IMG/VR virus record: IMGVR_UViG_3300036781_000418
Span: 186,001 to 250,000 of that record
Length of the DNA: 64,000 nt
Direction: 5' to 3' (one strand)
Both the position numbers and the translations under genes were made by a program. Positions 12,862-38,798 of this stretch are shown here, in pieces (position 1 is the first letter of the stretch; each line of letters begins with the position of its first letter). A model generated the notes under the pieces. That model was not told the DNA's origin. It was given only the letters and a program-made list of their open reading frames with translations, and made no database searches.

Positions 12862-12911
12862 ATCCTGACTAACTTGGTGTACGCGTAGCGTCGCCGAGTT
12901 AGAATGTACCT

Positions 12912-13205
12912 ACCATGTCGAAAGACACGGTGATTGTCGTAATTCGGCTTGAGTTGATGAGGGTAACACGGGGGTTCAACTCCCCCCAGCTCCACCAAAA
13001 GGGTTTACTGGAATCTTTCTGATGGGGCTGAACGGGTAATCGACTACGCTACTGAAATGATAGACGCGACATGCAAGGCGATCTGCACCGATGATGTTTG
13101 TCGGAAAGAAGCAAAATCTTTAAATGCTAACAACAGCGTTTACGCTCTCGCCGCTTAAAAACCGTGCGCAGCTGGGGCCGATCGCCTTATAATCCAAAGA
13201 TCACT
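12912..13205 (+). ncRNA. ssrA: circularly permuted (two-piece) tmRNA, tag ANNSVYALAA*
   Basis: T-arm plus CAGCTCCACCA (ends 12997) lies upstream of the GGGGCTG 5' end (13024); G3-U70 pair; resume codon GCT at 13126 after TAAAT; TAA at 13156-13158; outer ends approximate. Confidence 0.92.
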
Positions 13206-13229
13206 CAAGGGGCTTCGGCCCCTTGTTTT
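13206..13229 (+). terminator. intrinsic terminator of tmRNA
   Basis: CAAGGGGC-TTCG-GCCCCTTG-TTTT. Confidence 0.85.
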
Positions 13230-13303
13230 ATGCCCAGACCCAAACAATCTGTTGGCGTAAAACCGTAAATAGTCTATGATGCCTCCATTGGTCGAGGCAC
13301 CCC

Positions 13304-13792: not shown

Positions 13793-13869
13793 GACTCCAT
13801 AGCTCAGTTGGTTAGAGCAGCGGCCTTCAAAGCCGCCGGTCCTCGGTTCGAGCCCGAGTGGAGCCACCA
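13793..13869 (+). tRNA. tRNA with UCA anticodon (opal-reading), copy 1
   Basis: GACTCCA/TGGAGCC-ACCA acceptor; anticodon arm GCGGC-CTTCAAA-GCCGC; canonical D and T arms; short variable loop. Confidence 0.88.
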
Positions 13870-13928: not shown

Positions 13929-14005
13929 GCGCCCATAGCTCAGCGGTCCAGAGCAACTTGCTTCAAACTTGTTGGTCCTCGGTTCGAATCCGAGTGGGCG
14001 CACCA
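13929..14005 (+). tRNA. tRNA with UCA anticodon (opal-reading), copy 2
   Basis: GCGCCCA/TGGGCGC-ACCA; anticodon arm ACTTG-CTTCAAA-CTTGT with two U-U mismatches. Confidence 0.78.
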
Positions 14006-28763: not shown

Positions 28764-29183
28764 ATGAAACTCAACCACCTACTTGAAACCGAGATGGACG
28801 CCGAAGAGTACGACCTTGCGTTGATGCTCATGAAGAAGCAGTTCGATAAAATTCCAGGCGTGAAGGTGATCACGTACCCAGCTAAAAACTCTGGAGTAAG
28901 TCATATTACGCTGAGGTTGGGCGAGGTTAGACGTGTTGGCACCGATGAAATTTCCGACTGTGACATCACAGTTTGGAACCGATTCAAGGATAAGGATAAT
29001 GGCTGGCAAGTCAAGGGTATCTTTTACACCAAAAAAGGTCAAGTGAACCCAGAGCTGATTCATCGAACCACACATGACGACAGCGCCGTTATCAAGGTAG
29101 TGCACTCGGTTATAGATCAGATCAAGGACAATCTTACTACTCTTGAAAATGCCGGTAAGATCGTATGGACGCGCGTCAAGTGA
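28764..29183 (+). CDS. hypothetical protein with MKLNHLLE N-terminus
   Basis: Shared N-terminal motif; more AT-rich than its neighbours. Confidence 0.65.
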   Translation: MKLNHLLETEMDAEEYDLALMLMKKQFDKIPGVKVITYPAKNSGVSHITLRLGEVRRVGTDEISDCDITVWNRFKDKDNGWQVKGIFYTKKGQVNPELIHRTTHDDSAVIKVVHSVIDQIKDNLTTLENAGKIVWTRVK

Positions 29184-29460
29184 AGACCCAGTCCCGAGAA
29201 AAGTGGGCGAACTTTTTGGCGCTTCGCTAAATAGGCGATACAATTACAACTTACGCTGCTTCATTGCAGCACGGGAAGAAACTTCAAATGTCGGTTCTAG
29301 GTTATTCAGTCACATCGTTGCCAGTCAGTGGACTCGGTTGCGGCGCGCCTGCATATGCCTCCCCGCTTACGAGGGCTCTCGGTTAGAAAGTTAGTTTACT
29401 AACATGATTACCGAGGGCCTAGACGAAAGTTTAGGCCCTCGATTGTTATGTGTGCTTTGT

Positions 29461-29534
29461 CAGAGTGTGGTGCCAAGTGGACGGCGACCTGCTTTGGAGA
29501 CAGGAACATGTCGGTTCGAGGCCGACCGCTCTGA
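29461..29534 (+). tRNA. tRNA-Pro(UGG), atypical, no encoded CCA
   Basis: CAGAGTG/CGCTCTG-A; TTTGGAG loop; weak D arm. Confidence 0.55.
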
Positions 29535-29732
29535 CAAAGCACATCTAGCGAGAACCCAAGTGCAAGGTTAGCCAAGCACAACGGTGCGATAGAATGCATT
29601 CATGCAAGTTGATGTTGAAGTTTGACATCGACAAAACAACTGAGGCCTTGCTTCAGTGACCTACCTCGGTAGGTACGCTCATTAAAAATTTGACGTGACA
29701 TCTAGTCCAAGGGCACCAACCCTTGGACATCT

Positions 29733-29806
29733 GCGCCCATAGCTCAATGGTAGAGTATCGCTTTGACATGGCGATTACGAAGGTTCGATTCCTTCTGGGC
29801 GCACCA
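29733..29806 (+). tRNA. tRNA-Val(GAC)
   Basis: TCGCT-TTGACAT-GGCGA; CCA encoded. Confidence 0.9.
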
Positions 29807-29809
29807 TTG

Positions 29810-29957
29810 TTCATAAACCCAAGAGTTACCGCTTGCAATCGGTTATCTACTTTAACTTGGTGTAAAAACCCGGAGTGCGGTTCGAGTCCGCACAACGCCC
29901 ATACTGGCTTCGGGGGCAATCTCCGAGAGCTACTTTTGTTGCTCTTGGGTTTATGAA
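29810..29957 (+). ncRNA. Y-RNA-like element A
   Basis: 16 bp outer stem TTCATAAACCCAAGAG/CTCTTGGGTTTATGAA; TACCG-N9-GGTTATC; internal T-arm GTGCGG-TTCGAGT-CCGCAC. Confidence 0.65.
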
Positions 29958-29966
29958 TTTTTCTGT

Positions 29967-30052
29967 GTGGACATGACTGAGAGGCTGAAGGTGACGGGCT
30001 GTAACCCCGTTCTGTAAAAAGCGCGTAGGTTCGAATCCTACTGGCCACACCA
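29967..30052 (+). tRNA. tRNA-Tyr(GUA)
   Basis: ACGGG-CTGTAAC-CCCGT; long variable arm; CCA. Confidence 0.9.
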
Positions 30053-30061
30053 AGTTTAGAT

Positions 30062-30135
30062 GCGGGATTCGTATAGTGGTATTACCTCAGCCTTCCAAGC
30101 TGATGATGAGGGTTCGATTCCCTTATCCCGCTCCA
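30062..30135 (+). tRNA. tRNA-Gly(UCC)
   Basis: TCAGC-CTTCCAA-GCTGA; U73-CCA. Confidence 0.93.
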
Positions 30136-30150
30136 CATTAAGAGGCTTGA

Positions 30151-30618
30151 ATGGCTAGAGGAAGAATTGAAGTCTCACGTGAGCAACTCCTCCAAGCAAT
30201 TGAATCGACAGATTCTGCCGTTCAAGCTTCTAAGCAGTTAGGATTGATGTACACCACGTTTATTCGCAGGTGTAAAGAGCATCAACTATATGCTCCAAAT
30301 CAAGGTGGTAAAGGAACTCAAAAACCTCGACCACAGATGAAAATCGCTCTTGAGGATATCTTCAACGGTAAACATTTGATGGATTCAAAAGCCATTAAAC
30401 GGAAACTGTTTGAAGCAGGTCTTAAGAAAGAAGAATGCGAGTGTTGTGGAATAGGTCCAGTGTGGAATGGCAAGAAGCTTACGCTTCAGCTTGACCACAT
30501 TGATGGAGATCGAACTCACAATGCTTTTGAGAATCTGAGAATTCTCTGCCCTAACTGTCACACTCAGACAGCCACATTTAGTAAGGGTAAAAATAGGACA
30601 CATGCGTCTGTGGCGTAA
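30151..30618 (+). CDS. HNH endonuclease (free-standing, homing-type)
   Basis: CECCG..LQLDHIDGDRTHNAFENLRILCPNCHTQT; AT-rich; stop lies inside the downstream tRNA-Leu. Confidence 0.9.
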   Translation: MARGRIEVSREQLLQAIESTDSAVQASKQLGLMYTTFIRRCKEHQLYAPNQGGKGTQKPRPQMKIALEDIFNGKHLMDSKAIKRKLFEAGLKKEECECCGIGPVWNGKKLTLQLDHIDGDRTHNAFENLRILCPNCHTQTATFSKGKNRTHASVA

Positions 30619-30689
30619 TTGGTAGCCGCGCTAGGTTGAGGGCCTAGTCCTATAATGGGGTGCAGGTTCGAGTCCTGTCAGACGCACCA
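30604..30689 (+). tRNA. tRNA-Leu(GAG)
   Basis: CTAGG-TTGAGGG-CCTAG; long variable arm; ACCA. Confidence 0.9.
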
Positions 30690-30696
30690 TGTTTTT

Positions 30697-30771
30697 GGGG
30701 GAGTACCTCAGTGTTAGAGGGCCCGCTTTTTAAGCGGAAAGTCGAAGGTTCAACTCCTTCCTCCCCCACCA
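30697..30771 (+). tRNA. tRNA-Lys(UUU)
   Basis: CCCGC-TTTTTAA-GCGGA; ACCA. Confidence 0.85.
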
Positions 30772-30775
30772 GTTT

Positions 30776-30891
30776 GAGAACCGTCGTTGATTGGTTATCG
30801 GAAAAGTCAGGGGTGCTTAAACCCCAGGATGAGCATGGTTCAAGCCCGTGCACCCTCGCAAGAGGTTTTACCGATCTGCATTTTTGTTCTC
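30776..30891 (+). ncRNA. Y-RNA-like element B
   Basis: GAGAAC/GTTCTC outer stem; AACCG-N9-GGTTATC; internal T-arm-like GCATGG-TTCAAGC-CCGTGC. Confidence 0.6.
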
Positions 30892-30901
30892 TCCGTTTTC
30901 C

Positions 30902-30996
30902 GACGAACCGTCGTCGAAGGGTTATCTAGTTCACGACTAAAGGGCGCGTATGTGTCCGGCTGCAGAAGCCATCACCCTTCACATCATTTGTTTGTC
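30902..30996 (+). ncRNA. Y-RNA-like element C
   Basis: GACGAAC/GTTTGTC and GAAGGGT/ACCCTTC stems enclosing three small hairpins; AACCG-N9-GGTTATC. Confidence 0.65.
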
Positions 30997-31000
30997 ACTT

Positions 31001-31075
31001 GGGCTTCTAGTATAGGGGGAATTACTACTGTCTTGCACGCAGTGAATCGGGGTTCGAGTCCCCGGAGGTCCACCA
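31001..31075 (+). tRNA. tRNA-Ala(UGC)
   Basis: ACTGT-CTTGCAC-GCAGT; G3-U70; ACCA. Confidence 0.9.
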
Positions 31076-31084
31076 AGTTTTAAT

Positions 31085-31161
31085 CGGAGTGTAGCGCAGT
31101 CTGGTAGCGCATCTGCTTTGGGAGCAGAGGGTCCCAGGTTCGAATCCTGGTACTCCGACCA
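31085..31161 (+). tRNA. tRNA-Pro(UGG)
   Basis: CGGAGTG; TCTGC-TTTGGGA-GCAGA; ACCA. Confidence 0.95.
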
Positions 31162-31221
31162 CGTTTTCGCACGGCACGGATGACCGTTATCATCCACACT
31201 ACTACGACTACAAGGAACTAA

Positions 31222-31509
31222 ATGGTACACGTAAAGATCATGTCCGGTGAGGACACGCACGATTCTTACCCAGGTAAGAACTACACGCTGATCACAGTCA
31301 ATGACCGAGATCGGATTCAGTTCGGCGAATGGGGTTCGCTCTTCGGTAACCCAGCCAACACAGCTGACGATCGCGGTGGAAACACCGAGGTGATGATCGT
31401 GATTCGCGAGAAGAGTTCAGAGCAGGAGACGTACCCGCTGTTGGGGAACGTCTACATCATGAACGATCAAGGTAAGACGATTGCGACTCGCCAGAAGAGC
31501 ATCAATTAA
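31222..31509 (+). CDS. hypothetical protein
   Basis: AAGGA RBS; 95 aa between tRNAs. Confidence 0.65.
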   Translation: MVHVKIMSGEDTHDSYPGKNYTLITVNDRDRIQFGEWGSLFGNPANTADDRGGNTEVMIVIREKSSEQETYPLLGNVYIMNDQGKTIATRQKSIN

Positions 31510-31516
31510 GAACAAC

Positions 31517-31624
31517 GCGGACGTAGCTCAGTTGGATTAGAGCTCGGCACACAAAACAAAGGCGGCCGGCTTGCCGATCAGTAGTGTGACGCGGTCAGAG
31601 GTTCGAGCCCTCTCGTACGCACCA
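31517..31624 (+). ncRNA. tRNA-like RNA with an expanded anticodon loop
   Basis: Normal acceptor, D and T arms with ACCA; CACAC/GTGTG stem closes a ~31 nt loop with no 7-nt anticodon loop. Confidence 0.7.
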
Positions 31625-31806
31625 AACGCGGACTCTCCCTGCTCACAGCGCTCGGAACGCCCATACAACCCATGGAAGAGCTCCTAGCTAGTACCTAGAG
31701 GCGGACTTTCGGCATCACTTAAAAACTGGTGCGGTTGGTGGTTAGCTTGTATGGTGCTCCCTGAGTAAAGAGGACCCGACCGGACAAGTCGCAAAACTGT
31801 TCCGAT

Positions 31807-31882
31807 GCAGGGGTAGCTCAGTTGGTAGAGTACTTGTTTGCCAAGCAAGACGTCGCGGGTTCGAACCCCGTTCCCTGCTCCA
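31807..31882 (+). tRNA. tRNA-Gly(GCC)
   Basis: CTTGT-TTGCCAA-GCAAG; TCCA. Confidence 0.93.
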
Positions 31883-31888
31883 AATTTT

Positions 31889-31978
31889 GGACACTTGGCC
31901 GAGAGGCTTAAGGCACCGGTCTTGAAAACCGACGGGCCCTTACGGGTCCCGTGAGTTCGAATCTCACAGTGTCCGCCA
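31889..31978 (+). tRNA. tRNA-Ser(UGA)
   Basis: CCGGT-CTTGAAA-ACCGA; long variable arm; GCCA. Confidence 0.92.
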
Positions 31979-31983
31979 GAACA

Positions 31984-32045
31984 TAGCAACCGCACGTGCA
32001 GGGTTATCATCCATTCGCTCTCCCTGTACAACCTCTTTGTTGCTA
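31984..32045 (+). ncRNA. minimal Y-RNA-like element D
   Basis: TAGCAAC/GTTGCTA and GTGCAGGG/CCCTGTAC stems; pyrimidine-rich loop; AACCG-N9-GGTTATC. Confidence 0.65.
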
Positions 32046-32056
32046 GTATTTCAGTT

Positions 32057-32180
32057 AGGGATGTCGTCCAGTGGTAGGACAGCCGCCTCAACGTCGTGAA
32101 TGACATCTTTAGTTGCGCAAGTAACCGCCGCTTCATGGTTATCCAAGCAGCTTACGTGGGTTCGATCCCCACCATCCCTA
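32057..32180 (+). ncRNA. tRNA (Gly-like) with the Y-type stem inserted in the anticodon loop
   Basis: AGGGATG/CATCCCT; D and T arms intact; ~53 nt insert AAC..CTTTAGTTGC-GCAA-GTAACCG-N9-GGTTAT. Confidence 0.7.
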
Positions 32181-32224
32181 ACCCCTTGACTTCAAGGGAA
32201 AGTATCCATTGGGTTCTTTCCTTT

Positions 32225-32354
32225 GGGGTCGTAGTGTAGTGGACAGCACGTTAACATCGATTGCTCCCTTTGTTGGACTTTGAATCCAACCGCTCGTGAT
32301 TGGTTATCTTTCTACAAAAAGACAGGATGGGTTCGAATCCCATCGACTCCACCA
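32225..32354 (+). ncRNA. tRNA-like RNA (G3-U70, ACCA) with the Y-type stem inserted 5' of the anticodon arm
   Basis: GGGGTCG/CGACTCC-ACCA; insert TAAC..CTTTGTTGGA-CTTTGAA-TCCAACCG-N9-GGTTA. Confidence 0.7.
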
Positions 32355-32367
32355 AAATTCTTTCCAT

Positions 32368-32496
32368 GCAGTCTTGGCGTAACGGTAGCGCGCGAACAGT
32401 CGTTCGCATCTTTAGTTGTCGCAAGGCAACCGTTCGTGAATGGTTATCTAAAGTACAAAGACGAGGTCCGTGGTTCAATTCCCGGGGACTGCACCA
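32368..32496 (+). ncRNA. tRNA-like RNA (ACCA) with the Y-type stem inserted in the anticodon stem
   Basis: GCAGTCT/GGACTGC-ACCA; insert AAC..CTTTAGTTGTC-GCAA-GGCAACCG-N9-GGTTA. Confidence 0.7.
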
Positions 32497-32564
32497 ACTA
32501 TTGGAGACGACAATGACAAACGAGAAAGGGCGATTGTGTTAGGTTAACTACACAAGGAGCCCAA

Positions 32565-32942
32565 ATGAGCCGAACCTTTCGGTGCAAGAACTACGAAGAC
32601 ACGCAGAACACGAGCTGGGACCGTCAAGGTCGCAAGATCGGTGGTTTCTACTGCGAGTACAGCTACGCGAACGAAGTCTACGACAGCAACCTTCACTGGG
32701 GCTGGCGGTACGTGCACATCTTTCGCCCTCCAACTCAGGAGGAGCTGATCAAGGCGTACTGGCGGAACCACGGCGAAAGCCGACACCGCTGCGCTCGCTC
32801 TCCCAGTCGGTACCACCGCGGCACGAGGATGGCGGAGAATCGTCGAATCAACAACCAGGAGCTGCATAAGTTCCTGAAGAACCCAGATCACGAGCCGATG
32901 CTCGAGGCCAACCCTCGAAACTGCTGGTGGGACTGGAGCTGA
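32565..32942 (+). CDS. hypothetical basic protein
   Basis: AAGGAG RBS; 125 aa. Confidence 0.7.
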   Translation: MSRTFRCKNYEDTQNTSWDRQGRKIGGFYCEYSYANEVYDSNLHWGWRYVHIFRPPTQEELIKAYWRNHGESRHRCARSPSRYHRGTRMAENRRINNQELHKFLKNPDHEPMLEANPRNCWWDWS

Positions 32943-33048
32943 TTTTCCGTTGTGAGCCTTGATCGGCCAAAGTCGCTGACTTATACGGAACCTGTGCAGC
33001 CTCATCAGCTGCACCGTGGTGACCATGGACAGTCACCGATCATTCAAC

Positions 33049-33135
33049 GCGGGTGTGGCGAAATTGGTGGCCGCGCTAGGTTTAGGTCCTAGTGGATTTA
33101 CATCCTTGCAGGTTCGAATCCTGTCACCCGTACCA
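33049..33135 (+). tRNA. tRNA-Leu(UAG)
   Basis: CTAGG-TTTAGGT-CCTAG; long variable arm; ACCA. Confidence 0.92.
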
Positions 33136-33299
33136 GTTTGGGGAGCATGGTTAGCGCCGTGTTCAGGCTAGCTTGGCCAAGCGGTTTAGTAGCGGACGGC
33201 CGTTCGCGAGCGACTTAGAGATGATGGTAGTGCTGTTCGACTCAGCGCCATCGAAAGCCACCCAAAACCCATAAATACTCCATACGTTTTGGAGTAGCC

Positions 33300-33629
33300 A
33301 TGAAGGTTGCACAGTTGTTCGAAGAGCTGAAAGCCTACACAGGTGGTCGGCTTTCAAAGACTCTCGAGAATGCAATGTTGGAGTTCTGCGATGCGTTTGA
33401 CATCGACAGCTTCTCGGTCTCAACTGAGAAGTTTCATCAGCCGCATCCAACTAAAGGTTGGAGCGATACGGTAAACGTGAAGAACTTCTTCATCAACATG
33501 GGGACTGAAAAGAACGCGACGCTGTTGAAACGGTACTTGAAGGACAAGGGCTTTGGAGTCGAAGATCGATACCGCCCTGAACATGTCGTCAATACTTGGA
33601 ACGTTCCAAAGAAGTTCAAGTCAAAGTAA
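33300..33629 (+). CDS. hypothetical protein with MKVAQLFEE N-terminus
   Basis: TAAATA at 33272; GGAG RBS. Confidence 0.7.
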   Translation: MKVAQLFEELKAYTGGRLSKTLENAMLEFCDAFDIDSFSVSTEKFHQPHPTKGWSDTVNVKNFFINMGTEKNATLLKRYLKDKGFGVEDRYRPEHVVNTWNVPKKFKSK

Positions 33630-33632
33630 CAC

Positions 33633-33720
33633 GCGTCGTGACCCTACATCGGTCTTCTAAGCCGATGACGAAAAAGAGTAGGATGGACGTCCACGGGTTC
33701 GATTCCTGCACGCCGCTCCA
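33633..33720 (+). ncRNA. D-arm-less tRNA-Arg(UCU)-like RNA
   Basis: GCGTCGT/ACGCCGC-TCCA; ATCGGT-CTTCTAA-GCCGAT nested in a CCTAC/GTAGG stem; T-loop TTCGATT. Confidence 0.55.
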
Positions 33721-33738
33721 TAACACAGAGGACCGATC

Positions 33739-34101
33739 ATGATTTTGCTTGAGTACCCCGACAACAAGAGCGCCCGCCAACACCTTACCTTGGGTAAGGA
33801 CTACGCGGTCGTTCGAGAGCTTGGCAACGGTCTCGTGATCGAGGCCGACAACTCAACTCCTGAGTCGCCCAACTTTCACACGCTGTTGGCTTCACGCTTC
33901 AAGGAAGTCGGTGTTGTGGTAAACCGTGACTGCACGAAAGCGAAGCCGATGCCGTTGGAGCTTGGACCGAGAGCGGTCGAGCTCAACATCATCTGGGACC
34001 ATGATGACATTGAAGACCTAGCTCCCGACCTTGACTCACGTTACGCCCACTTCAAGTGTGGTTCATGTGGGCACGATTGGTGGGCGGATTTAGGCGATTA
34101 A
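33739..34101 (+). CDS. hypothetical protein with C-terminal CxxC
   Basis: GAGGA RBS; KCGSCGHDW. Confidence 0.65.
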   Translation: MILLEYPDNKSARQHLTLGKDYAVVRELGNGLVIEADNSTPESPNFHTLLASRFKEVGVVVNRDCTKAKPMPLELGPRAVELNIIWDHDDIEDLAPDLDSRYAHFKCGSCGHDWWADLGD

Positions 34102-34104
34102 CTT

Positions 34105-34192
34105 GGAGATGTGGCAGAGTGGCCTATCGCACAACCTTGGAAAGGTTGAGGACTTTATCGTCCCATGGGTTCGAATCCCATCATCTCCTCCA
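34105..34192 (+). tRNA. tRNA-Ser(GGA)
   Basis: CAACC-TTGGAAA-GGTTG; long variable arm; CCA. Confidence 0.9.
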
Positions 34193-34198
34193 GACAGA

Positions 34199-34276
34199 AG
34201 CAGGGTAGCTCAGCCAGGTAGAGCGCTGGTCTCATAAGCCAGAGGTCGTGGGTTCAAATCCCTCCCGTTGCAACCA
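34199..34276 (+). tRNA. tRNA-Met/Ile2(CAU)
   Basis: CTGGT-CTCATAA-GCCAG; imperfect acceptor stem; ACCA. Confidence 0.75.
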
Positions 34277-34357
34277 ACACGTGGACCCTTGTTCACGGTA
34301 CAGCGACCGTAGCGTCGCAGTAGAATTGACTCATCAACAACGCATTGGACCGATGCT

Positions 34358-34669
34358 ATGCAACACAAGATGAACCAACTGATGCGTGTCAGCAAGACAC
34401 TTGGTTTCACTGAGTTCGCGTTTCCACTCGAACTCACGTACGGTCCAGCCTACGACGGCTACTGGATTGATCGAGTTGGACGTCTCTTTTCCACCAAGCG
34501 TGGTGAAGTTACGCCGCTGATCGCCAAGTGCACGGCCTTCGTCAAGGGCAACAGCTACGGCCTCATCATCCGTGGTAAGAACAAGTCGGTCTCTGGAACC
34601 GAACTGCTCCATGAACTGCGCAGCTCGCCCGAATGGCCGGTGCTGCTCGAACAATGGGGCAACATGTAA
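34358..34669 (+). CDS. hypothetical protein
   Basis: ORF between tRNAs; TAGAAT upstream. Confidence 0.55.
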   Translation: MQHKMNQLMRVSKTLGFTEFAFPLELTYGPAYDGYWIDRVGRLFSTKRGEVTPLIAKCTAFVKGNSYGLIIRGKNKSVSGTELLHELRSSPEWPVLLEQWGNM

Positions 34670-34675
34670 GATCAT

Positions 34676-34761
34676 GCGCATGTGGTGTAATTGGTAGCCA
34701 CACTTCTCTCAAAAGGAAGCGTCCGTAGGGCGTGTCGGTTCGAGTCCGACCATGCGCACCA
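34676..34761 (+). tRNA. tRNA-Leu(CAA)
   Basis: CTTCT-CTCAAAA-GGAAG; ACCA. Confidence 0.92.
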
Positions 34762-34893
34762 GGTGAGACCCCCGAAGTGACTAGGACGCGAGGCGGTCAT
34801 CGAGTAGAGGCGGCCACGGAATCGTGGCGGTAAGTAGTGAACACAACCTCCTCTACCGACCAGTGAGGTGACTGGATGAGAAAGCAGGGTTAA

Positions 34894-34993
34894 ACGCACT
34901 GATGAGCTGGTGAGAGTCCAGCGAAACGGGAAGGTGAACAGCCGATCGAGCGCTAGGTCGCGGCTCTCGACGCAGTATCCTTTCCGTATGCGT
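34894..34993 (+). ncRNA. type I hammerhead ribozyme
   Basis: Stem I ACGCA/TGCGT; core CTGATGA; stem II GCTGG/CCAGC; GAAA; stem III CGGGAAGG/CCTTTCCG; GTA cleavage triplet ending at 34988. Confidence 0.85.
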
Positions 34994-35007
34994 AAATAGA
35001 AACATAT

Positions 35008-35093
35008 GCTGGAGTAGCCAAGTGGTTGACGGCAACTGCCTTGTAAGCAGTCGGAGTTATCCCGCGCAGGTTCGAATCCTGTCTCCAGCTCCA
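35008..35093 (+). tRNA. tRNA-Thr(UGU) with an unusually long variable arm
   Basis: ACTGC-CTTGTAA-GCAGT; extra arm CGGAGTTATCCCGC; TCCA. Confidence 0.8.
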
Positions 35094-35336
35094 AGAAGTT
35101 CCAGGTGACTACGTGTAGGGGGTCTGGCCCAGTGCACACAGAAAATGCGTAGGATATTGGCCGTGAGAACCATGGTTTATGAGGCATGAGAAAAAGATTT
35201 GTCGGGACTGTGCCTCCGGAAACGACATGACCTGCACGAGAATAAGAGCAATGGTAAGCTTTGCAGGGTGCCACAAATATTTGTCAACGCGGAAGCAGTT
35301 GACCGGGGCTCTGTGTTTCATCCCCAACCTATCAAT

Positions 35337-35415
35337 GTCGAAGTGGGAGAGTGGATTACTTCCGACAGGCTGCAACCCTGTAGACGCATCGGTTCGATTC
35401 CGGCCTTCGACTCCA
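35337..35415 (+). tRNA. tRNA-Cys(GCA)
   Basis: ACAGG-CTGCAAC-CCTGT; U73-CCA. Confidence 0.85.
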
Positions 35416-35528
35416 AACGGGACCCTACGTAAGGGTAAAACGTCTGACCTGACGGGGAAACGCTTGAAGGGGCGCCTGACGGTGGGAGAAACAGACGACG
35501 AAACTGTAGGTCCTTCGGTTTCAACAAT

Positions 35529-35614
35529 GCGACTGTGGCGTAATTGGTAGCCGCGCAACGCTCAGAACGTTGTGGTCCTAGACCGTGGAGGTTCGAGTCC
35601 TCTCAGTCGCACCA
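35529..35614 (+). tRNA. tRNA-Leu(CAG)
   Basis: CAACG-CTCAGAA-CGTTG; ACCA. Confidence 0.92.
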
Positions 35615-35623
35615 TTGATCAAT

Positions 35624-35711
35624 AGCGGGGTAGAGCGTAGTTTGGTAGCGTGTTGGGCTCATAACCCAGCGTCGTAAGACCCCGGAGGTTCGAGTCCTCC
35701 TCCCGCAACCA
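35624..35711 (+). tRNA. initiator-like tRNA-fMet(CAU) with an extra arm
   Basis: 1:72 mismatch; GGG/CCC anticodon stem; CTCATAA loop; variable hairpin GTC-GTAA-GAC. Confidence 0.75.
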
Positions 35712-35718
35712 CAACAAT

Positions 35719-35844
35719 GGTCCAATAGTGTAGTAGCACGATCAACAAAAGCACATCATCATGGCGGTAGCCAAGCCTAGGAGAGCGCATCTCCCACTGA
35801 TGAAGGAGCAGGTGGAGAATCGGGACTCCTGCGTTGGATCACCA
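35719..35844 (+). ncRNA. tRNA-like RNA with a large structured central insertion
   Basis: GGTCCAA/TTGGATC-ACCA; short D arm; TCATCA/TGATGA stem; GCAGG/CCTGC T-stem with an oversized loop. Confidence 0.55.
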
Positions 35845-35849
35845 GAATT

Positions 35850-36014
35850 AAGCAACCGATAGATAACGGTTATCAGAAAGTAGCGTCGAAAGACTTGTGG
35901 GTTCGAGTCCCACCTGAGAGTCACCTAAGACGTGATGGTTTGTACTCAGTGGCGGAATTGGTAAACGCACAACTCCGGCCGCAAGGCCATCTCCGTGTCG
36001 CTCCTTTGTTGCTT
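35850..36014 (+). ncRNA. YrlA-like Y RNA (circularly permuted tRNA-Leu-like module)
   Basis: AAGCAAC/GTTGCTT outer stem; AACCG-N9-GGTTATC; then T-arm, loop-closed acceptor stem CTGAG/CTCAG, D-arm TGGCGGAATTGGTAAACGC. Confidence 0.75.
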
Positions 36015-36038
36015 TTCATAAACTAGAGGAACTTTCCC

Positions 36039-36485
36039 ATGTCAACCAAGTATGAACTCCACGTCACCACGTGGGAGTGTGATGCTGATCATCACTTGAC
36101 CAAGATTCTCGAGAATCTTAGCCGTGACGACGTTACCGCGTTCGTTGAACTGGCCAAGAAGTTCGCCTCAACACACGCCACACCACCGGGCGTCGGCAAC
36201 CACAGTGTGGCCGACGACGTGCTCGTTGAGGCGGTCCAGTCGGTGCTGACAAAGTACCCAGACGCTTACTATCTTCAGCTGCTCTTTGAACAAGACGCAC
36301 CTAAAGATTACCAAGGTGACATCAGCCTTGCTGACTTTTACTGGCAGGCCCTATGCGAGTCGCTGTTGGACTATCCAGTGATCGAGCCGTACCAAGACGA
36401 GTACCACTTTTGCCGCGTCTACTGCGTCCACAAGGTCTATGAAGTCCCAGTCGCGAAGGTCGACGTCACGGAGTGTTTCCAATGA
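36039..36485 (+). CDS. hypothetical protein
   Basis: GAGGA RBS. Confidence 0.7.
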   Translation: MSTKYELHVTTWECDADHHLTKILENLSRDDVTAFVELAKKFASTHATPPGVGNHSVADDVLVEAVQSVLTKYPDAYYLQLLFEQDAPKDYQGDISLADFYWQALCESLLDYPVIEPYQDEYHFCRVYCVHKVYEVPVAKVDVTECFQ

Positions 36486-36754
36486 GACCGCTGAACGCAC
36501 GCCAGATCGGCGAGCTTGAAGCCCGTGAGTTTCTCGGCGACGAAACGTGGAAGCGTTGGAAGATCGCGTATGACGAAGCCATGGGCTACCGCAAGACGCT
36601 GAAAGGCAAACCGACGGAGGAGCAGCTGCTGACCCTCCAGAACAACGCAATGGACATCGAGTTCTACGGCTCCGTGCTGTTCCACTCGGCGACCCTTGCA
36701 AACCGAAACATGTGCGGCTGCACTCGATGCGGCCAAGCACGACAGAACAAGTAA
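36473..36754 (+). CDS. hypothetical protein
   Basis: Likely start ATG 36482, coupled to the upstream stop. Confidence 0.55.
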   Translation: MFPMRPLNARQIGELEAREFLGDETWKRWKIAYDEAMGYRKTLKGKPTEEQLLTLQNNAMDIEFYGSVLFHSATLANRNMCGCTRCGQARQNK

Positions 36755-36881
36755 ACCGCTCGTTGTTGATTATCCCTTCCACCCTTAGGGACCTTAGTGT
36801 AACTGGTAGCATTCCGGATTGATACTCCGGGGGATGGGTTCGAATCCCTGGTCAAACTCGACGACACTTCTTTGTTTACTT
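36749..36881 (+). ncRNA. Y-type stem enclosing a near-complete tRNA-Ile(GAU)
   Basis: AAGTAAAC/GTTTACTT and GTTGTTGA/TCGACGAC stems; inner D-arm, CCGGA-TTGATAC-TCCGG, T-arm; no CCA. Confidence 0.65.
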
Positions 36882-37010
36882 CTCAAAAACGCCGGCCTTC
36901 ACGGGTCGGACCTTCGCCGAACGTGGTAGGCGTATCGCTGGCTAAATCGATTATGCGGGCGTAGCTAAGTAAAGACAACTCTTTCTAGTTATCGGACTAA
37001 ACTGGACCAT

Positions 37011-37100
37011 GGAGATATGGCTGAGAGGCTTAAGGCGACGGTTTGCTAAATCGTAGGCCCTTCACCGGGCCCGTGGGTTCGAATCCCACTATCTCCTCCA
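37011..37100 (+). tRNA. tRNA-Ser(GCU)
   Basis: ACGGT-TTGCTAA-ATCGT; long variable arm; CCA. Confidence 0.9.
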
Positions 37101-37280
37101 AACACGATGTCACGTCAGATTTTGAGAACTCCGAGGGCCGCACCTCGATAACTTGCGGTCGGTGGTCACGCCATCGTGAATAACGCGTGACGGGTTCGGC
37201 TCTACCCCAGTTAGCAAATGAGCAGGCACGGCAGGAGTCTTTAACGCATCGTTGGACGGAGGTCCATCATGTCCGCTTAT

Positions 37281-37367
37281 GGGGAGTTGGTAGCGTGGCG
37301 CTTAACCGGTTTCGAAAGCCGGCCGCCCTCTTACGGGGGCAGGGTTCGATTCCCTAACTCCCCTCCA
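37281..37367 (+). tRNA. tRNA-Ser(CGA), 8/4-type fold
   Basis: GGGGAGTT/AACTCCCC 8 bp acceptor; AGGG/CCCT 4 bp T stem; tiny D loop; CCGGT-TTCGAAA-GCCGG. Confidence 0.7.
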
Positions 37368-37380
37368 ACTTTACACCATC

Positions 37381-37680
37381 ATGAAACTTCGCTACGTTCT
37401 TCAGGCACTCAGGGACCAGCTCCCTATTCGCCGCTTCCTACGCAACTTTCTCGTGACGAGAAACGCGTGGGGCCTGTTCCACATCAACTCACACGTCGCA
37501 CAGCGCTCAGGTAAGCCTAAGGTCGGCTACCCAACGAAGGCGTCGGCGATTCGAGCTGGTGAGAATATGGGGAAGAAGACGGGCTACCACTACAGCCCGT
37601 ACAAGTGCTGCCACTGCGCCGACTTTCACATCGGTCGGAACCGCGACTCCATCGCAGCCCGACCTGAACAACGACCTTAG
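37381..37680 (+). CDS. hypothetical protein with C-terminal zinc knuckle
   Basis: YKCCHCADFHIG. Confidence 0.65.
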   Translation: MKLRYVLQALRDQLPIRRFLRNFLVTRNAWGLFHINSHVAQRSGKPKVGYPTKASAIRAGENMGKKTGYHYSPYKCCHCADFHIGRNRDSIAARPEQRP

Positions 37681-38798
37681 ACGGCCGTTGGTGTGCTTGG
37701 CGCGGCCAAGGTGGTCATAGCCGCCGAGATCTGCGTCGAACCGACGAAGCCGGTGTTGATGTACTGGAACGTCGCGCCAGCCACACCCTTAACGGCGAAG
37801 CCAGTGCTGCCGTTCGAGTAGATCGTCGAAGCCAGCGACGCGAAGGTGCCGCCGTTGGCGACCACCGCAACGTCCGCGTTCAGCGAATCGTTCGTCACGT
37901 ACATGCCTTCCACGACCAACGTGCCACCCAGCACCGAGACGGCACCAGTTGCGTTGTTGGCTTCAAGGCCGCCGTTCGACAGGTAGATCTTGCCAGACCG
38001 CATGATGATGGCGGGTGAAGCACCGCACTCGGACACGAAGTTGCGAGCGTAGCCCGACACGTTCAGCAGGTCGACGGCCGCGGTGGAACCGCTGGCGACC
38101 TTGATGTCGACATTGACCCAGTGCATTGGCGAGGCCGTGACCGAGGTGCCGTTCACGAGGATGGCGCGCTGGCCGGCGTTCTGCATGGCGATCTTGACGT
38201 TGCGCAGTTCGAGCAGTCCAGCATTGACGCCGGTCATGGTGATAGCATCACCAGCACTTGGGTTGACCATCACGTCGCACAAGCCAAGGATCGTGTTGAA
38301 CTCGTTGCCGTTCAGCGTGGTCGACGGGTTGTAGGTGACGGAGCCGTTGATCGTGGTGCCAGCACCGGTGGAACCACCGAAGCCGACGATCACGGTGCGA
38401 GGGCGTGACACGCTCACGGCACCTGAGTAGACGCCTGGAAATACGAGGATGGTTGCCAAGGCACCGTCGGCCACGACCGTCAGCGCGTTGTCATGTGCCT
38501 TCTGGATAGTCAGGAACGGCTTGGAGATCGAACCGTCACCAGTCGTGTCGTTGCCGGTCTTGGAGACGAAGATGGCGGGCGTGAACGGTGCGATCGTCGT
38601 TGGCGCGCTGCCGCCACCTTCTTCGAACTCGATCCAGGCGGTGCCGTCCCAGGTGTAGTAGGTACCAGGCGCAACGCCTTCATCCGTAATGAGGATGATG
38701 TTGCCAGGCTTGATGTCGTTTGGGTAGGTCGCGGCGAAGGAGTCGGCGCGAGCACGGGTCATCGTCTGTGGACCCTTACCAATAGCACGATAGGTCAT
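37677..38798 (-). CDS. beta-helix (pectin-lyase-like/DUF1565-type) protein, possibly structural
   Basis: IFVSKTGNDTTGDGSISKPFLTIQKA..VFPGVY; AAGGA RBS; TAAATA at 38827-38832(-). Confidence 0.7.
   Translation of the reverse strand: MTYRAIGKGPQTMTRARADSFAATYPNDIKPGNIILITDEGVAPGTYYTWDGTAWIEFEEGGGSAPTTIAPFTPAIFVSKTGNDTTGDGSISKPFLTIQKAHDNALTVVADGALATILVFPGVYSGAVSVSRPRTVIVGFGGSTGAGTTINGSVTYNPSTTLNGNEFNTILGLCDVMVNPSAGDAITMTGVNAGLLELRNVKIAMQNAGQRAILVNGTSVTASPMHWVNVDIKVASGSTAAVDLLNVSGYARNFVSECGASPAIIMRSGKIYLSNGGLEANNATGAVSVLGGTLVVEGMYVTNDSLNADVAVVANGGTFASLASTIYSNGSTGFAVKGVAGATFQYINTGFVGSTQISAAMTTLAAPSTPTAV

What the first reader, a model, noticed from the sequence alone, without database searches (positions are those of the whole stretch)
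34894..34993. Hammerhead ribozyme just upstream of tRNA-Thr
Seen: complete core CUGAUGA/GAAA/GUA with three paired stems and a ~44-nt structured insert in loop III. Predicted cleavage after A34988 is 19 nt before the tRNA at 35008. Inference: self-processing of the polycistronic tRNA transcript, releasing an upstream structured RNA (about 34765-34988) with a 2',3'-cyclic phosphate end.
Basis: partly seen in the sequence, partly recalled or inferred. Interest (0 to 1): 0.65.

Follow-up and report, generated by a model that had tools for sequence, protein, structure and literature searches.

The report
Hammerhead ribozyme in jumbo-phage tRNA array
A genuine, evolutionarily conserved self-cleaving hammerhead ribozyme with an unusual extra domain sits just upstream of a tRNA gene in the tRNA array of a 343-kb soil phage and its relatives, where it most likely cuts the long tRNA precursor transcript.

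Summary
Window 34894-34993 (+) holds a complete type I hammerhead: stem I ACGCA/UGCGU, core CUGAUGA, stem II 5 bp, GAAA, stem III 8 bp with a 44-nt insert, and cleavage triplet GUA. The predicted cut after A34988 lies 19 nt before tRNA-Thr(UGU).

It is the only such motif in the 342.6-kb phage genome. Random genomes gave 0.025 loose and 0/200 strict matches.

Four further homologues were found, in three ~310-343-kb phage contigs and one 22-kb fragment. All lie in tRNA arrays on the tRNA strand, 3-19 nt upstream of a tRNA or tRNA-like gene. The core is invariant. 95% of stem cells pair, and 11 of 18 pairs show compensatory changes (0/500 shuffles). RNAalifold finds the same three-way junction unaided.

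The family also keeps three extras: a UAA 5' of stem I, a GAAC/AGUA internal loop in stem III (loop E / sarcin-ricin-like by sequence), and an apical GAG/CUC hairpin.

Cleavage and its role in processing the tRNA-array transcript are inferred. No RNA data exist for this phage. I rate it a new variant of a known ribozyme class in a context not described in the papers I could search.

The parts
34676..34761 (+). tRNA-Leu(CAA), upstream neighbour in the array
   Evidence: ARAGORN; Rfam tRNA 53.1 bits
34762..34890 (+). Structured but poorly conserved spacer upstream of the ribozyme. Only its first hairpin (GAGGCGGUCAUCGA) and its last bases (CAGGGUU, 34884-34890; with the next part CAGGGUUAA) recur in L091.
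   Evidence: Fold (z -0.6); contexts printed
34891..34893 (+). UAA immediately 5' of stem I, invariant in all five family members. Candidate partner of loop II for the stem I/II tertiary contact (inference).
   Evidence: Alignment A2 invariant columns T6 A7 A8
34894..34898 (+). Stem I, 5' strand (ACGCA)
   Evidence: covariation A-U to C-G or U-A, and C-G to U-A
34899..34905 (+). Catalytic core C3-A9 (CUGAUGA), invariant in the family
34906..34922 (+). Stem II (GCUGG/CCAGC) with 7-nt loop UGAGAGU
   Evidence: two pairs with compensatory changes
34923..34926 (+). Core G12 A13 A14 A15.1 (GAAA), invariant
   Evidence: the A15.1-U16.1 pair is predicted by RNAalifold
34927..34934 (+). Stem III proximal helix, 5' strand (CGGGAAGG)
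   Evidence: 7 of 8 pairs show compensatory change across the family
34935..34978 (+). Stem III extension. It has an internal loop U-GAAC (34935-34939) opposite AGUA-U (34974-34978), then a distal irregular helix and an apical hairpin with conserved GAG/CUC. About 90% identical to L084 although all three core stems differ.
34979..34986 (+). Stem III proximal helix, 3' strand (CCUUUCCG)
34987..34988 (+). U16.1 and A17. The predicted scissile bond is between A34988 and U34989 (triplet GUA, invariant in the family).
   Evidence: hammerhead numbering from established knowledge
34989..34993 (+). Stem I, 3' strand (UGCGU)
34989..35007 (+). 19-nt leader that would stay on tRNA-Thr with a 5'-OH after cleavage (inferred)
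   Evidence: Coordinates
35008..35093 (+). tRNA-Thr(UGU) with a long variable arm and encoded CCA; the downstream beneficiary
   Evidence: ARAGORN; Rfam tRNA 60.3 bits

Best explanation
Window 34894-34993 encodes an active-type (all core residues intact) type I hammerhead ribozyme. It belongs to a small family conserved in the tRNA arrays of a clade of ~310-343-kb jumbo phages.

Proposed mechanism:
1. The array is transcribed as a long precursor on the + strand.
2. Once the 3' strand of stem I emerges, and before the downstream tRNA is made, the ribozyme folds and cuts after A34988.
3. The whole ribozyme stays on the upstream fragment, which ends in a 2',3'-cyclic phosphate.
4. tRNA-Thr(UGU) is released carrying only a 19-nt leader with a 5'-OH. 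RNase P must still remove that leader.

The ribozyme therefore acts as a host-independent separator. It uncouples a tRNA from a long structured spacer that has no tRNA-type processing site of its own. The conserved stem III extension (GAAC/AGUA internal loop plus hairpin) is an accessory domain, probably a folding or tertiary-contact module or a protein-binding module.

Shown: the motif, its uniqueness in the genome, its conservation, its covariation and its fixed position before a tRNA. Inferred: transcription, cleavage, the order of processing steps and the role of the extra domain.
For: - Complete motif, and the hammerhead fold is the MFE structure.
- Unique in the genome, and absent from 200 random genomes at the observed quality.
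- A generic scan of viral contigs (hammerhead core plus a tRNA T-loop at a set distance, with no stem information) returned homologues L057/L066 and L064 with all stems paired.
- A metagenome scan added L084 and L091.
- On the five-sequence alignment, 95.4% of cells pair and 11 of 18 pairs have both-side changes. 0 of 500 shuffles reach this, and slid controls pair at 29-40%.
- RNAalifold predicts the same junction unaided, with 17 of 29 pairs compensatory.
- CUGAUGA, GAAA and GUA are invariant.
- There is one copy per complete genome in G000 and G007.
- All copies lie in tRNA arrays on the tRNA strand. The cut site is 3-19 nt before a tRNA or tRNA-like gene, although the tRNA's identity and the array order differ.
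- The carriers are related phages: flanking proteins are 30-70% identical and syntenic with the window.
- No promoter-like or terminator-like site lies between tRNA-Leu and tRNA-Thr.
- Precedents: hammerheads flank genes in phage transcripts (PMC3088659), and HDV-like theta ribozymes process phage tRNA 3' trailers (PMC10879173).
Against: - There is no RNA or cleavage evidence. The only public run with this DNA is the source metagenome.
- Stem I is only 5 bp, with no loop or bulge, so the stem I/II tertiary contact needed for fast cleavage at cellular Mg2+ is not evident.
- When the downstream tRNA is included, the global MFE structure drops stem I, and sometimes stem II. Enforcing them costs 0.2-6.9 kcal/mol.
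- Thermodynamic z-scores are unremarkable (-0.96 and -0.6).
- Rfam models do not reach threshold.
- The ribozyme cannot make a mature 5' end, because a leader of 3-19 nt remains. Its benefit over host nucleases is therefore unproven.
- Only five distinct sequences support the family.
- The closest relatives found by the AAA protein (G001, G002) are fragments that lack the tRNA array, so they say nothing.
Confidence: 0.62

Rival explanations
1. The ribozyme is real, but its purpose is to mature the upstream RNA. It would define the 3' end (with a protective 2',3'-cyclic phosphate) of a stable non-coding RNA made of the spacer plus the ribozyme, including its conserved stem III domain.
For: - A type I architecture leaves the whole ribozyme and its conserved extension on the upstream product.
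- The distal stem III insert is conserved in sequence (~90% between the window and L084) while the catalytic stems drift. This suggests the retained RNA has a job of its own.
Against: - The spacer upstream of the ribozyme is not conserved in length or sequence across the family (~129 nt, 71 nt, ~20 nt, or a different tRNA-like element).
- It folds no better than shuffles.
- The only constant neighbour is the downstream tRNA.
Confidence: 0.15
2. The ribozyme is a regulated (conditional) switch. The conserved GAAC/AGUA loop and hairpin in stem III would bind a phage or host protein or RNA. Release of the downstream tRNAs would then be timed during infection rather than constitutive.
For: - Sequence-level conservation of the stem III extension goes beyond what pairing requires.
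- AGUA/GAA matches the loop E / sarcin-ricin consensus, a common protein and tertiary-contact platform (established knowledge, recalled).
- A weak stem I and competing long-range pairings would make activity easy to modulate.
Against: - No ligand or partner is identified.
- No gene is consistently adjacent.
- The phage encodes no RtcB.
- The extension could simply stabilise the fold.
Confidence: 0.13
3. It is a selfish or relic element: a hammerhead carried along with a mobile insertion in the array, for example with the intervening spacer or homing-endonuclease traffic. It would give the phage no benefit.
For: - Hammerheads are common in selfish elements and prophage regions (PMC3088659).
- An HNH endonuclease ORF lies in the array.
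- Array order around the ribozyme is shuffled among relatives.
Against: - It is single-copy in each genome.
- It is retained with an intact core and compensatory changes across phages whose proteins are only 30-70% identical.
- It is always placed just before a tRNA.
Confidence: 0.08
4. It is a chance match to the hammerhead consensus in a GC-rich structured spacer.
For:
- Folding z-scores are not significant.
- Rfam gives no hit at gathering score.
Against: - 0 of 200 random genomes contain a motif of this quality.
- Four independent homologues show covariation in all three stems and an invariant core.
Confidence: 0.01

Closest known systems
Type I hammerhead ribozymes of bacteriophages and prophages (Perreault et al. 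2011, PMC3088659; Rfam clan CL00010)
   Same: - The same 3-way junction, the same 13 core nucleotides and an NUH (GUA) cleavage triplet.
- Open stem I.
- Intergenic position in a phage polycistronic unit, presumed to cut long transcripts into pieces.
   Different: - Here the target is a tRNA array, not mRNA.
- The ribozyme abuts a tRNA 5' end.
- Stem III carries a conserved ~40-55-nt domain with a GAAC/AGUA internal loop.
- Stem I is a bare 5-7 bp helix with a conserved 5' UAA instead of a loop, bulge or pseudoknot.
- Rfam models do not score it above threshold.
HDV-like theta ribozymes next to tRNAs in gut Caudoviricetes (Kienbeck et al. 2024, PMC10879173)
   Same: A small self-cleaving ribozyme physically coupled to phage-encoded tRNA genes and proposed to process the tRNA precursor without host nucleases.
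   Different: - It is a different ribozyme class and fold.
- Theta ribozymes sit 3' of the tRNA and remove the trailer. This hammerhead sits 5' and shortens the leader.
- The phage groups and habitats differ (gut versus soil and other environmental jumbo phages).
Engineered 5' hammerhead cassettes (ribozyme-flanked guide RNA or tRNA constructs)
   Same: A type I hammerhead is placed so that stem I's 3' strand is the start of the wanted RNA, releasing it with a 5'-OH. In L084, stem I overlaps the first two bases of the tRNA-like gene.
   Different: - This is natural, not designed.
- In four of the five members a leader of 6-19 nt remains, so RNase P is still needed.
Loop E / sarcin-ricin (bulged-G, S-turn) motif, consensus AGUA/GAA
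   Same: The internal loop in stem III has 5'-GAA-3' opposite 5'-AGUA-3' in all five members, in the orientation the motif needs.
   Different: This is a match to a recalled consensus only. No structure or probing data exist, and the flanking non-canonical pairs vary.

Membership tests
Hammerhead ribozyme (class) | Three helices (I, II, III) radiating from one junction | tested here: met
   MFE and centroid fold. RNAalifold consensus on five homologues. 95.4% of stem cells paired.
Hammerhead ribozyme (class) | Conserved core: C3 U4 G5 A6 N7 G8 A9, G12 A13 A14, and the A15.1-U16.1 pair | tested here: met
   CUGAUGA 34899-34905, GAAA 34923-34926 and U34987 are invariant in all five sequences. 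G10.1-C11.1 and C15.2-G16.2 are also present.
Hammerhead ribozyme (class) | Cleavage triplet NUH (H not G) 5' of stem I | tested here: met
   GUA at 34986-34988, invariant in the family.
Hammerhead ribozyme (class) | Helices supported by covariation rather than by one sequence | tested here: met
   11 of 18 pairs have changes on both sides. 0 of 500 shuffles reach this, and slid controls give 0-6 such pairs.
Hammerhead ribozyme (class) | Tertiary contact between stem I and stem II (loop-loop, loop-bulge or pseudoknot) for fast cleavage | tested here: inconclusive
   Stem I has no loop or bulge, and I saw no loop II complement in the flanks. The one candidate is an invariant UAA 5' of stem I, 5 bp from the core, facing a 4-7-nt loop II.
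Hammerhead ribozyme (class) | Mg2+-dependent self-cleavage giving 2',3'-cyclic phosphate and 5'-OH ends | not testable with these tools
   No RNA run holds this phage. A bench assay is needed.
Rfam Hammerhead_1 (RF00163) / Hammerhead_3 (RF00008) | Score at or above the family's gathering threshold | tested here: not met
   No hit at gathering score. Hammerhead_3 gives 18.8 bits against 48.5 on the core only. RF00163 does not list the site at E<=10 in the genome. The same models also miss plain phage type I hammerheads such as L056, L058 and L070 at E<=0.01. This reflects model coverage and the 44-nt insert, not the fold.
tRNA-linked phage ribozymes (theta-type association) | Ribozyme directly adjacent to a phage tRNA gene on the same strand, recurrently | tested here: met
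   All five members lie 3-19 nt upstream of a tRNA or tRNA-like gene. Unrelated type I hammerheads L056, L058/L059 and L068 lie roughly 35-65 nt upstream of tRNAs.
tRNA-linked phage ribozymes (theta-type association) | HDV-like double-pseudoknot fold | tested here: not met
   The fold is a hammerhead. There is no HDV-family Rfam hit in 29000-38000 at E<=1.

The most novel reading that the evidence does not exclude
This is a previously undescribed subclass of hammerhead, specific to jumbo-phage tRNA arrays. Its conserved stem III S-turn domain would be a docking site for a protein or for the nascent tRNA. Self-cleavage, and therefore release of phage tRNAs, would be gated during infection. That would make it a natural hammerhead counterpart, on the 5' side, of the theta ribozymes on the 3' side.
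Probability: 0.2. Interest if true: 0.78.

Novelty: new variant of a known kind. Interest (0 to 1): 0.6.

Why it matters
The biological role of most bacterial and phage hammerheads is still unknown. Here the context is unusually explicit:
- one copy per genome;
- always a few bases upstream of a tRNA;
- inside the tRNA arrays that jumbo phages carry to support or escape host translation.

If cleavage is confirmed, phage tRNA maturation would be partly ribozyme-driven on the 5' side as well as the 3' side (theta ribozymes). It would also offer a compact natural "ribozyme-tRNA" cassette.

The conserved GAAC/AGUA domain grafted on stem III is a testable candidate for an accessory or regulatory module in a natural hammerhead. 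The covariance model built here (R1) could be used to annotate such elements, which Rfam models currently miss.

Tried and rejected
- DNA similarity to GenBank phages matched only the tRNAs.
- The small neighbouring ORFs P0001 and P0002 have no relatives in viral contigs. P0001 is an orphan among 5.8 billion proteins. P0002 has only distant phage hits.
- Relatives found through the 851-aa AAA protein (G001-G006) were fragments. Either they lacked the tRNA array, or they were AT-rich distant phages with no convincing hammerhead of any topology.
- Pattern CGCACTGATGAGC...GCGAAAC returned other phage type I hammerheads that lie upstream of protein-coding genes. They are not family members.
- A second viral scan with the GAACA pattern gave no new members. 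L141 is the same 310,728-bp contig as L084.
It yielded one unrelated type I hammerhead and no family member, so absence from bacterial genomes is not established.
- Hammerhead_1 in the phage's own genome gave only sub-threshold noise elsewhere.
- No RtcB gene is present in the phage.
- The minus-strand ORFs over the region (34672-35274 and 34853-35035) have no Pfam match and overlap tRNA genes, so I judged them spurious.
- I considered a loop II / stem III-insert pseudoknot (GAGAG with CUCUC). I dropped it because the CUCUC lies inside a conserved helix and the pairing is not conserved in the homologues.
- Public reads: only the source DNA run exists.

Full report
**Source and setting.** The window is bases 186001-250000 of a 342,591-bp IMG/VR virus record with direct terminal repeats and 57% GC, that is, a complete jumbo-phage genome. 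The only public sequencing run holding the locus is a soil metagenome, probably the source sample, and no RNA run exists. The + strand between about 29.4 and 37.4 kb is a tRNA array interspersed with small ORFs. ARAGORN tRNA/tmRNA genes in the window, and Rfam adds several tRNA-like hits.

**The observation.**
- stem I: ACGCA 34894-34898 with UGCGU 34989-34993;
- core: CUGAUGA 34899-34905;
- stem II: GCUGG/CCAGC with loop UGAGAGU;
- GAAA 34923-34926;
- stem III: CGGGAAGG 34927-34934 with CCUUUCCG 34979-34986, enclosing 44 nt;
- U34987 and A34988, which makes GUA the cleavage triplet.

The site after A34988 is 19 nt before tRNA-Thr(UGU) at 35008-35093. The open helix is stem I, so this is a type I hammerhead. 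The 100-nt RNA folds into exactly this junction as its MFE and centroid structure, and it does so within the full 246-nt spacer.

The folding z-scores are unremarkable (-0.96 and -0.6). Rfam gives no hammerhead at gathering score, only an 18.8-bit core match to Hammerhead_3, and RF00163 does not list the site. Rfam also failed at E<=0.01 on plain-looking phage type I hammerheads recovered later, so this negative says little.

**Chance.** A descriptor scan for all three hammerhead topologies on both strands of the whole genome finds only this site. In 200 Markov-1 random genomes of the same size, a loose type I descriptor hit 0.025 times per genome. One requiring stems of at least 5, 5 and 6 bp (the site has 5, 5 and 8) never hit.

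**Relatives.** Ordinary routes failed. DNA similarity matched only tRNAs. The neighbouring small ORFs are orphans. Relatives found through an 851-aa AAA protein were fragments without the array, or distant AT-rich phages without a hammerhead.

I then scanned IMG/VR with a pattern that carries no stem information: CTGATGAG, 8-30 nt, CGAAA, 115-145 nt, then a tRNA T-loop. Eight of the 13 stretches returned have a full type I hammerhead. L057 (identical to L066) and L064 are plainly homologous to the window's element. They share stem I and the core, differ in stem II by a G-C to C-G swap, and have a wholly different but fully paired stem III.

A metagenome scan (core, then GAACA 7-9 nt after GAAAC) added L084 and L091. 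L084 lies on a 310,728-bp contig that also appears as IMG/VR locus L141; L091 lies on a 315,690-bp contig. L064 lies in a complete 343,229-bp phage with terminal repeats (G007). The model built from the family finds exactly one copy in G000 and one in G007.

Flanking ORFs of L084/L141 and of G007 match syntenic window genes at 30-70% amino-acid identity. The carriers are therefore diverged members of one jumbo-phage group, although G007 lacks the AAA gene.

**Covariation.** On the MAFFT alignment of the five distinct sequences (A2):
- CUGAUGA, GAAA and GUA are invariant.
- For the 18 core-stem pairs, 95.4% of cells are standard pairs and 11 pairs carry changes on both sides. No shuffle out of 500 reaches either value.
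- Sliding the 3' partners by 1-3 columns drops pairing to 29-40%.
- RNAalifold, given no structure, predicts the same three-way junction including the A15.1-U16.1 pair, plus helices in the stem III extension. 17 of its 29 pairs are compensatory.

With five sequences this is not a formal statistic, but the signal is unambiguous. Stem III alone is CGGGAAGG/CCUUUCCG, CAAUUUGAU/AUCAAGUUG, CAAUUUAGA/UCUAAGUUG, and two further versions that carry a bulge.

**Family-specific features.**
1. A UAA immediately 5' of stem I is invariant. Stem I is a bare 5-7-bp helix, so this overhang, at the distance from the core where natural hammerheads make their stem I/II contact, is my candidate partner for loop II. 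This is inference.
2. Stem III is interrupted by an internal loop with 5'-GAAC-3' opposite 5'-AGUA-3' in all five. That matches the loop E / sarcin-ricin consensus AGUA/GAA. The consensus is recalled from established knowledge, not tested.
3. A distal helix and hairpin with conserved GAG/CUC follow. Between the window and L084 this distal part is about 90% identical although stems I, II and proximal III all differ. This points to constraint on sequence and not only on pairing.

**Context.** All five copies lie in tRNA arrays on the tRNA strand. The predicted cut lies at these distances from the next tRNA:
- 19 nt before tRNA-Thr(UGU) in the window;
- 6 nt before tRNA-Leu(UAG) in L091;
- about 18 nt before tRNA-Pro(UGG) in L064;
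- 7 nt before a tRNA-like gene in L057;
- 3 nt before a tRNA-Cys-like gene in L084, whose first two bases are part of stem I.

The identity of the downstream tRNA and the order of the array vary. The upstream spacer varies even more: ~129 nt here, 71 nt in L091, ~20 nt in L084, and a different closed tRNA-like element of ~130 nt in L064 and L057. No promoter-like or terminator-like site separates tRNA-Leu(CAA), the ribozyme and tRNA-Thr.

Unrelated type I hammerheads upstream of tRNAs turned up in other viral contigs (L056, L058/L059, L068). The scan required a tRNA T-loop, however, so it cannot measure enrichment.

**Mechanism (inferred).**
- Co-transcriptional folding and cleavage after A34988 would leave the ribozyme on the upstream fragment, with a 2',3'-cyclic phosphate end.
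- The tRNA would be freed with a short 5'-OH leader.
- A leader remains, and a 5' phosphate is needed on mature tRNA, so RNase P must still act.
- The ribozyme thus works as a nuclease-independent separator between a long structured spacer and the next tRNA. It does not replace RNase P.

Caveats:
- There are no RNA data.
- Stem I is short.
- With the tRNA included, the global MFE structure replaces stem I, and sometimes stem II, with long-range pairings. The cost of enforcing them is 0.2-6.9 kcal/mol. This matters less if cleavage precedes tRNA synthesis.
- The phage encodes no RtcB, so no ligation partner for the ends is evident.

**Comparison with what is known.** Hammerheads of all three topologies are common in phages and prophages, where they are thought to cut polycistronic transcripts (PMC3088659). 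HDV-like theta ribozymes sit beside phage tRNAs and are proposed to process 3' trailers (PMC10879173). Five full-text searches found no paper linking natural hammerheads to phage tRNA arrays or jumbo phages. The library does not hold most subscription journals, so prior description cannot be excluded.

I therefore file this as a member of the hammerhead class: four defining features were tested and met, the tertiary contact is inconclusive, and catalysis is untestable here. It is a new variant by its accessory stem III domain and its tRNA-array context.

**Limits of the searches.**
- Only pattern scans, not covariance-model scans, could be run on the large collections.

Noticed in passing
window 29827, 30779, 30906, 31988, 32123, 32288, 32428, 35854, 36754 (+ strand): Repeated motif AACCG-N9-GGTTATC. 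The 342.6-kb genome has 16 hits with at most one mismatch, and 9 of them lie inside the tRNA array, all on the + strand; a reversed control pattern hits once. The same motif stands next to tRNAs in relatives L064 and L091. It could be an array-specific promoter, operator or processing signal.
   Followed up: partly
window 35008-35093; also G007 (L114 9896-9983) and L057 304-389: The tRNA with the Thr anticodon UGU has a class II shape (long variable arm, 86-88 nt), which is unusual for tRNA-Thr. Near-copies occur in Synechococcus phage BUCT-ZZ01 (88.5% identity) and in T5-like phages (~77%), where they are annotated tRNA-Thr.
   Followed up: no
window 12886-13249, 13793-13869 and 13929-14005: A two-piece (permuted) tmRNA with tag ANNSVYALAA is followed by two tandem tRNAs with anticodon UCA. 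ARAGORN labels them SeC, but Rfam scores them as ordinary tRNA, so they look like opal-suppressor or UGA-reading tRNAs. The relative L084 carries a tRNA(CUA).
   Followed up: no
window 31517-31621, 32057-32180, 32225-32354, 33632-33717, 36790-36854: tRNA-like Rfam hits that ARAGORN does not call. Several carry 30-50-nt inserts (one contains the AACCG...GGTTATC motif), and one scores as a tmRNA-like tRNA domain. They could be intron-containing, degenerate or non-canonical tRNAs.
   Followed up: no
window 30151-30618 (+): An HNH homing-endonuclease ORF (phrog_10822, E 5e-31) is embedded in the tRNA array.
   Followed up: no
L064 (G007), just downstream of its hammerhead; L064 and L057, upstream of theirs: In G007 the tRNA-Pro after the ribozyme is enclosed by a 12-bp leader/trailer helix (AAGAGCACUUUG / CAAAGUGCUCUU). 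Upstream of the ribozyme, L064 and L057 share a conserved closed ~130-nt tRNA-like element with a T-arm that no tool names.
   Followed up: no
L070 1649-1699 and 2665-2734: An unrelated phage contig carries a Twister-P5 ribozyme (48.4 bits, above gathering score) about 1 kb upstream of a type I hammerhead. This fits the known co-occurrence of the two classes.
   Followed up: no
window 34906-34922 versus 35008-35014 and 35084-35090: Stem II of the ribozyme (GCUGG/CCAGC) repeats the acceptor stem of the downstream tRNA-Thr (GCUGGAG/CUCCAGC). This lets the tRNA 3' end pair with the ribozyme in global MFE folds. L091 has the same stem II but a different tRNA, so the match is probably coincidental.
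   Followed up: partly
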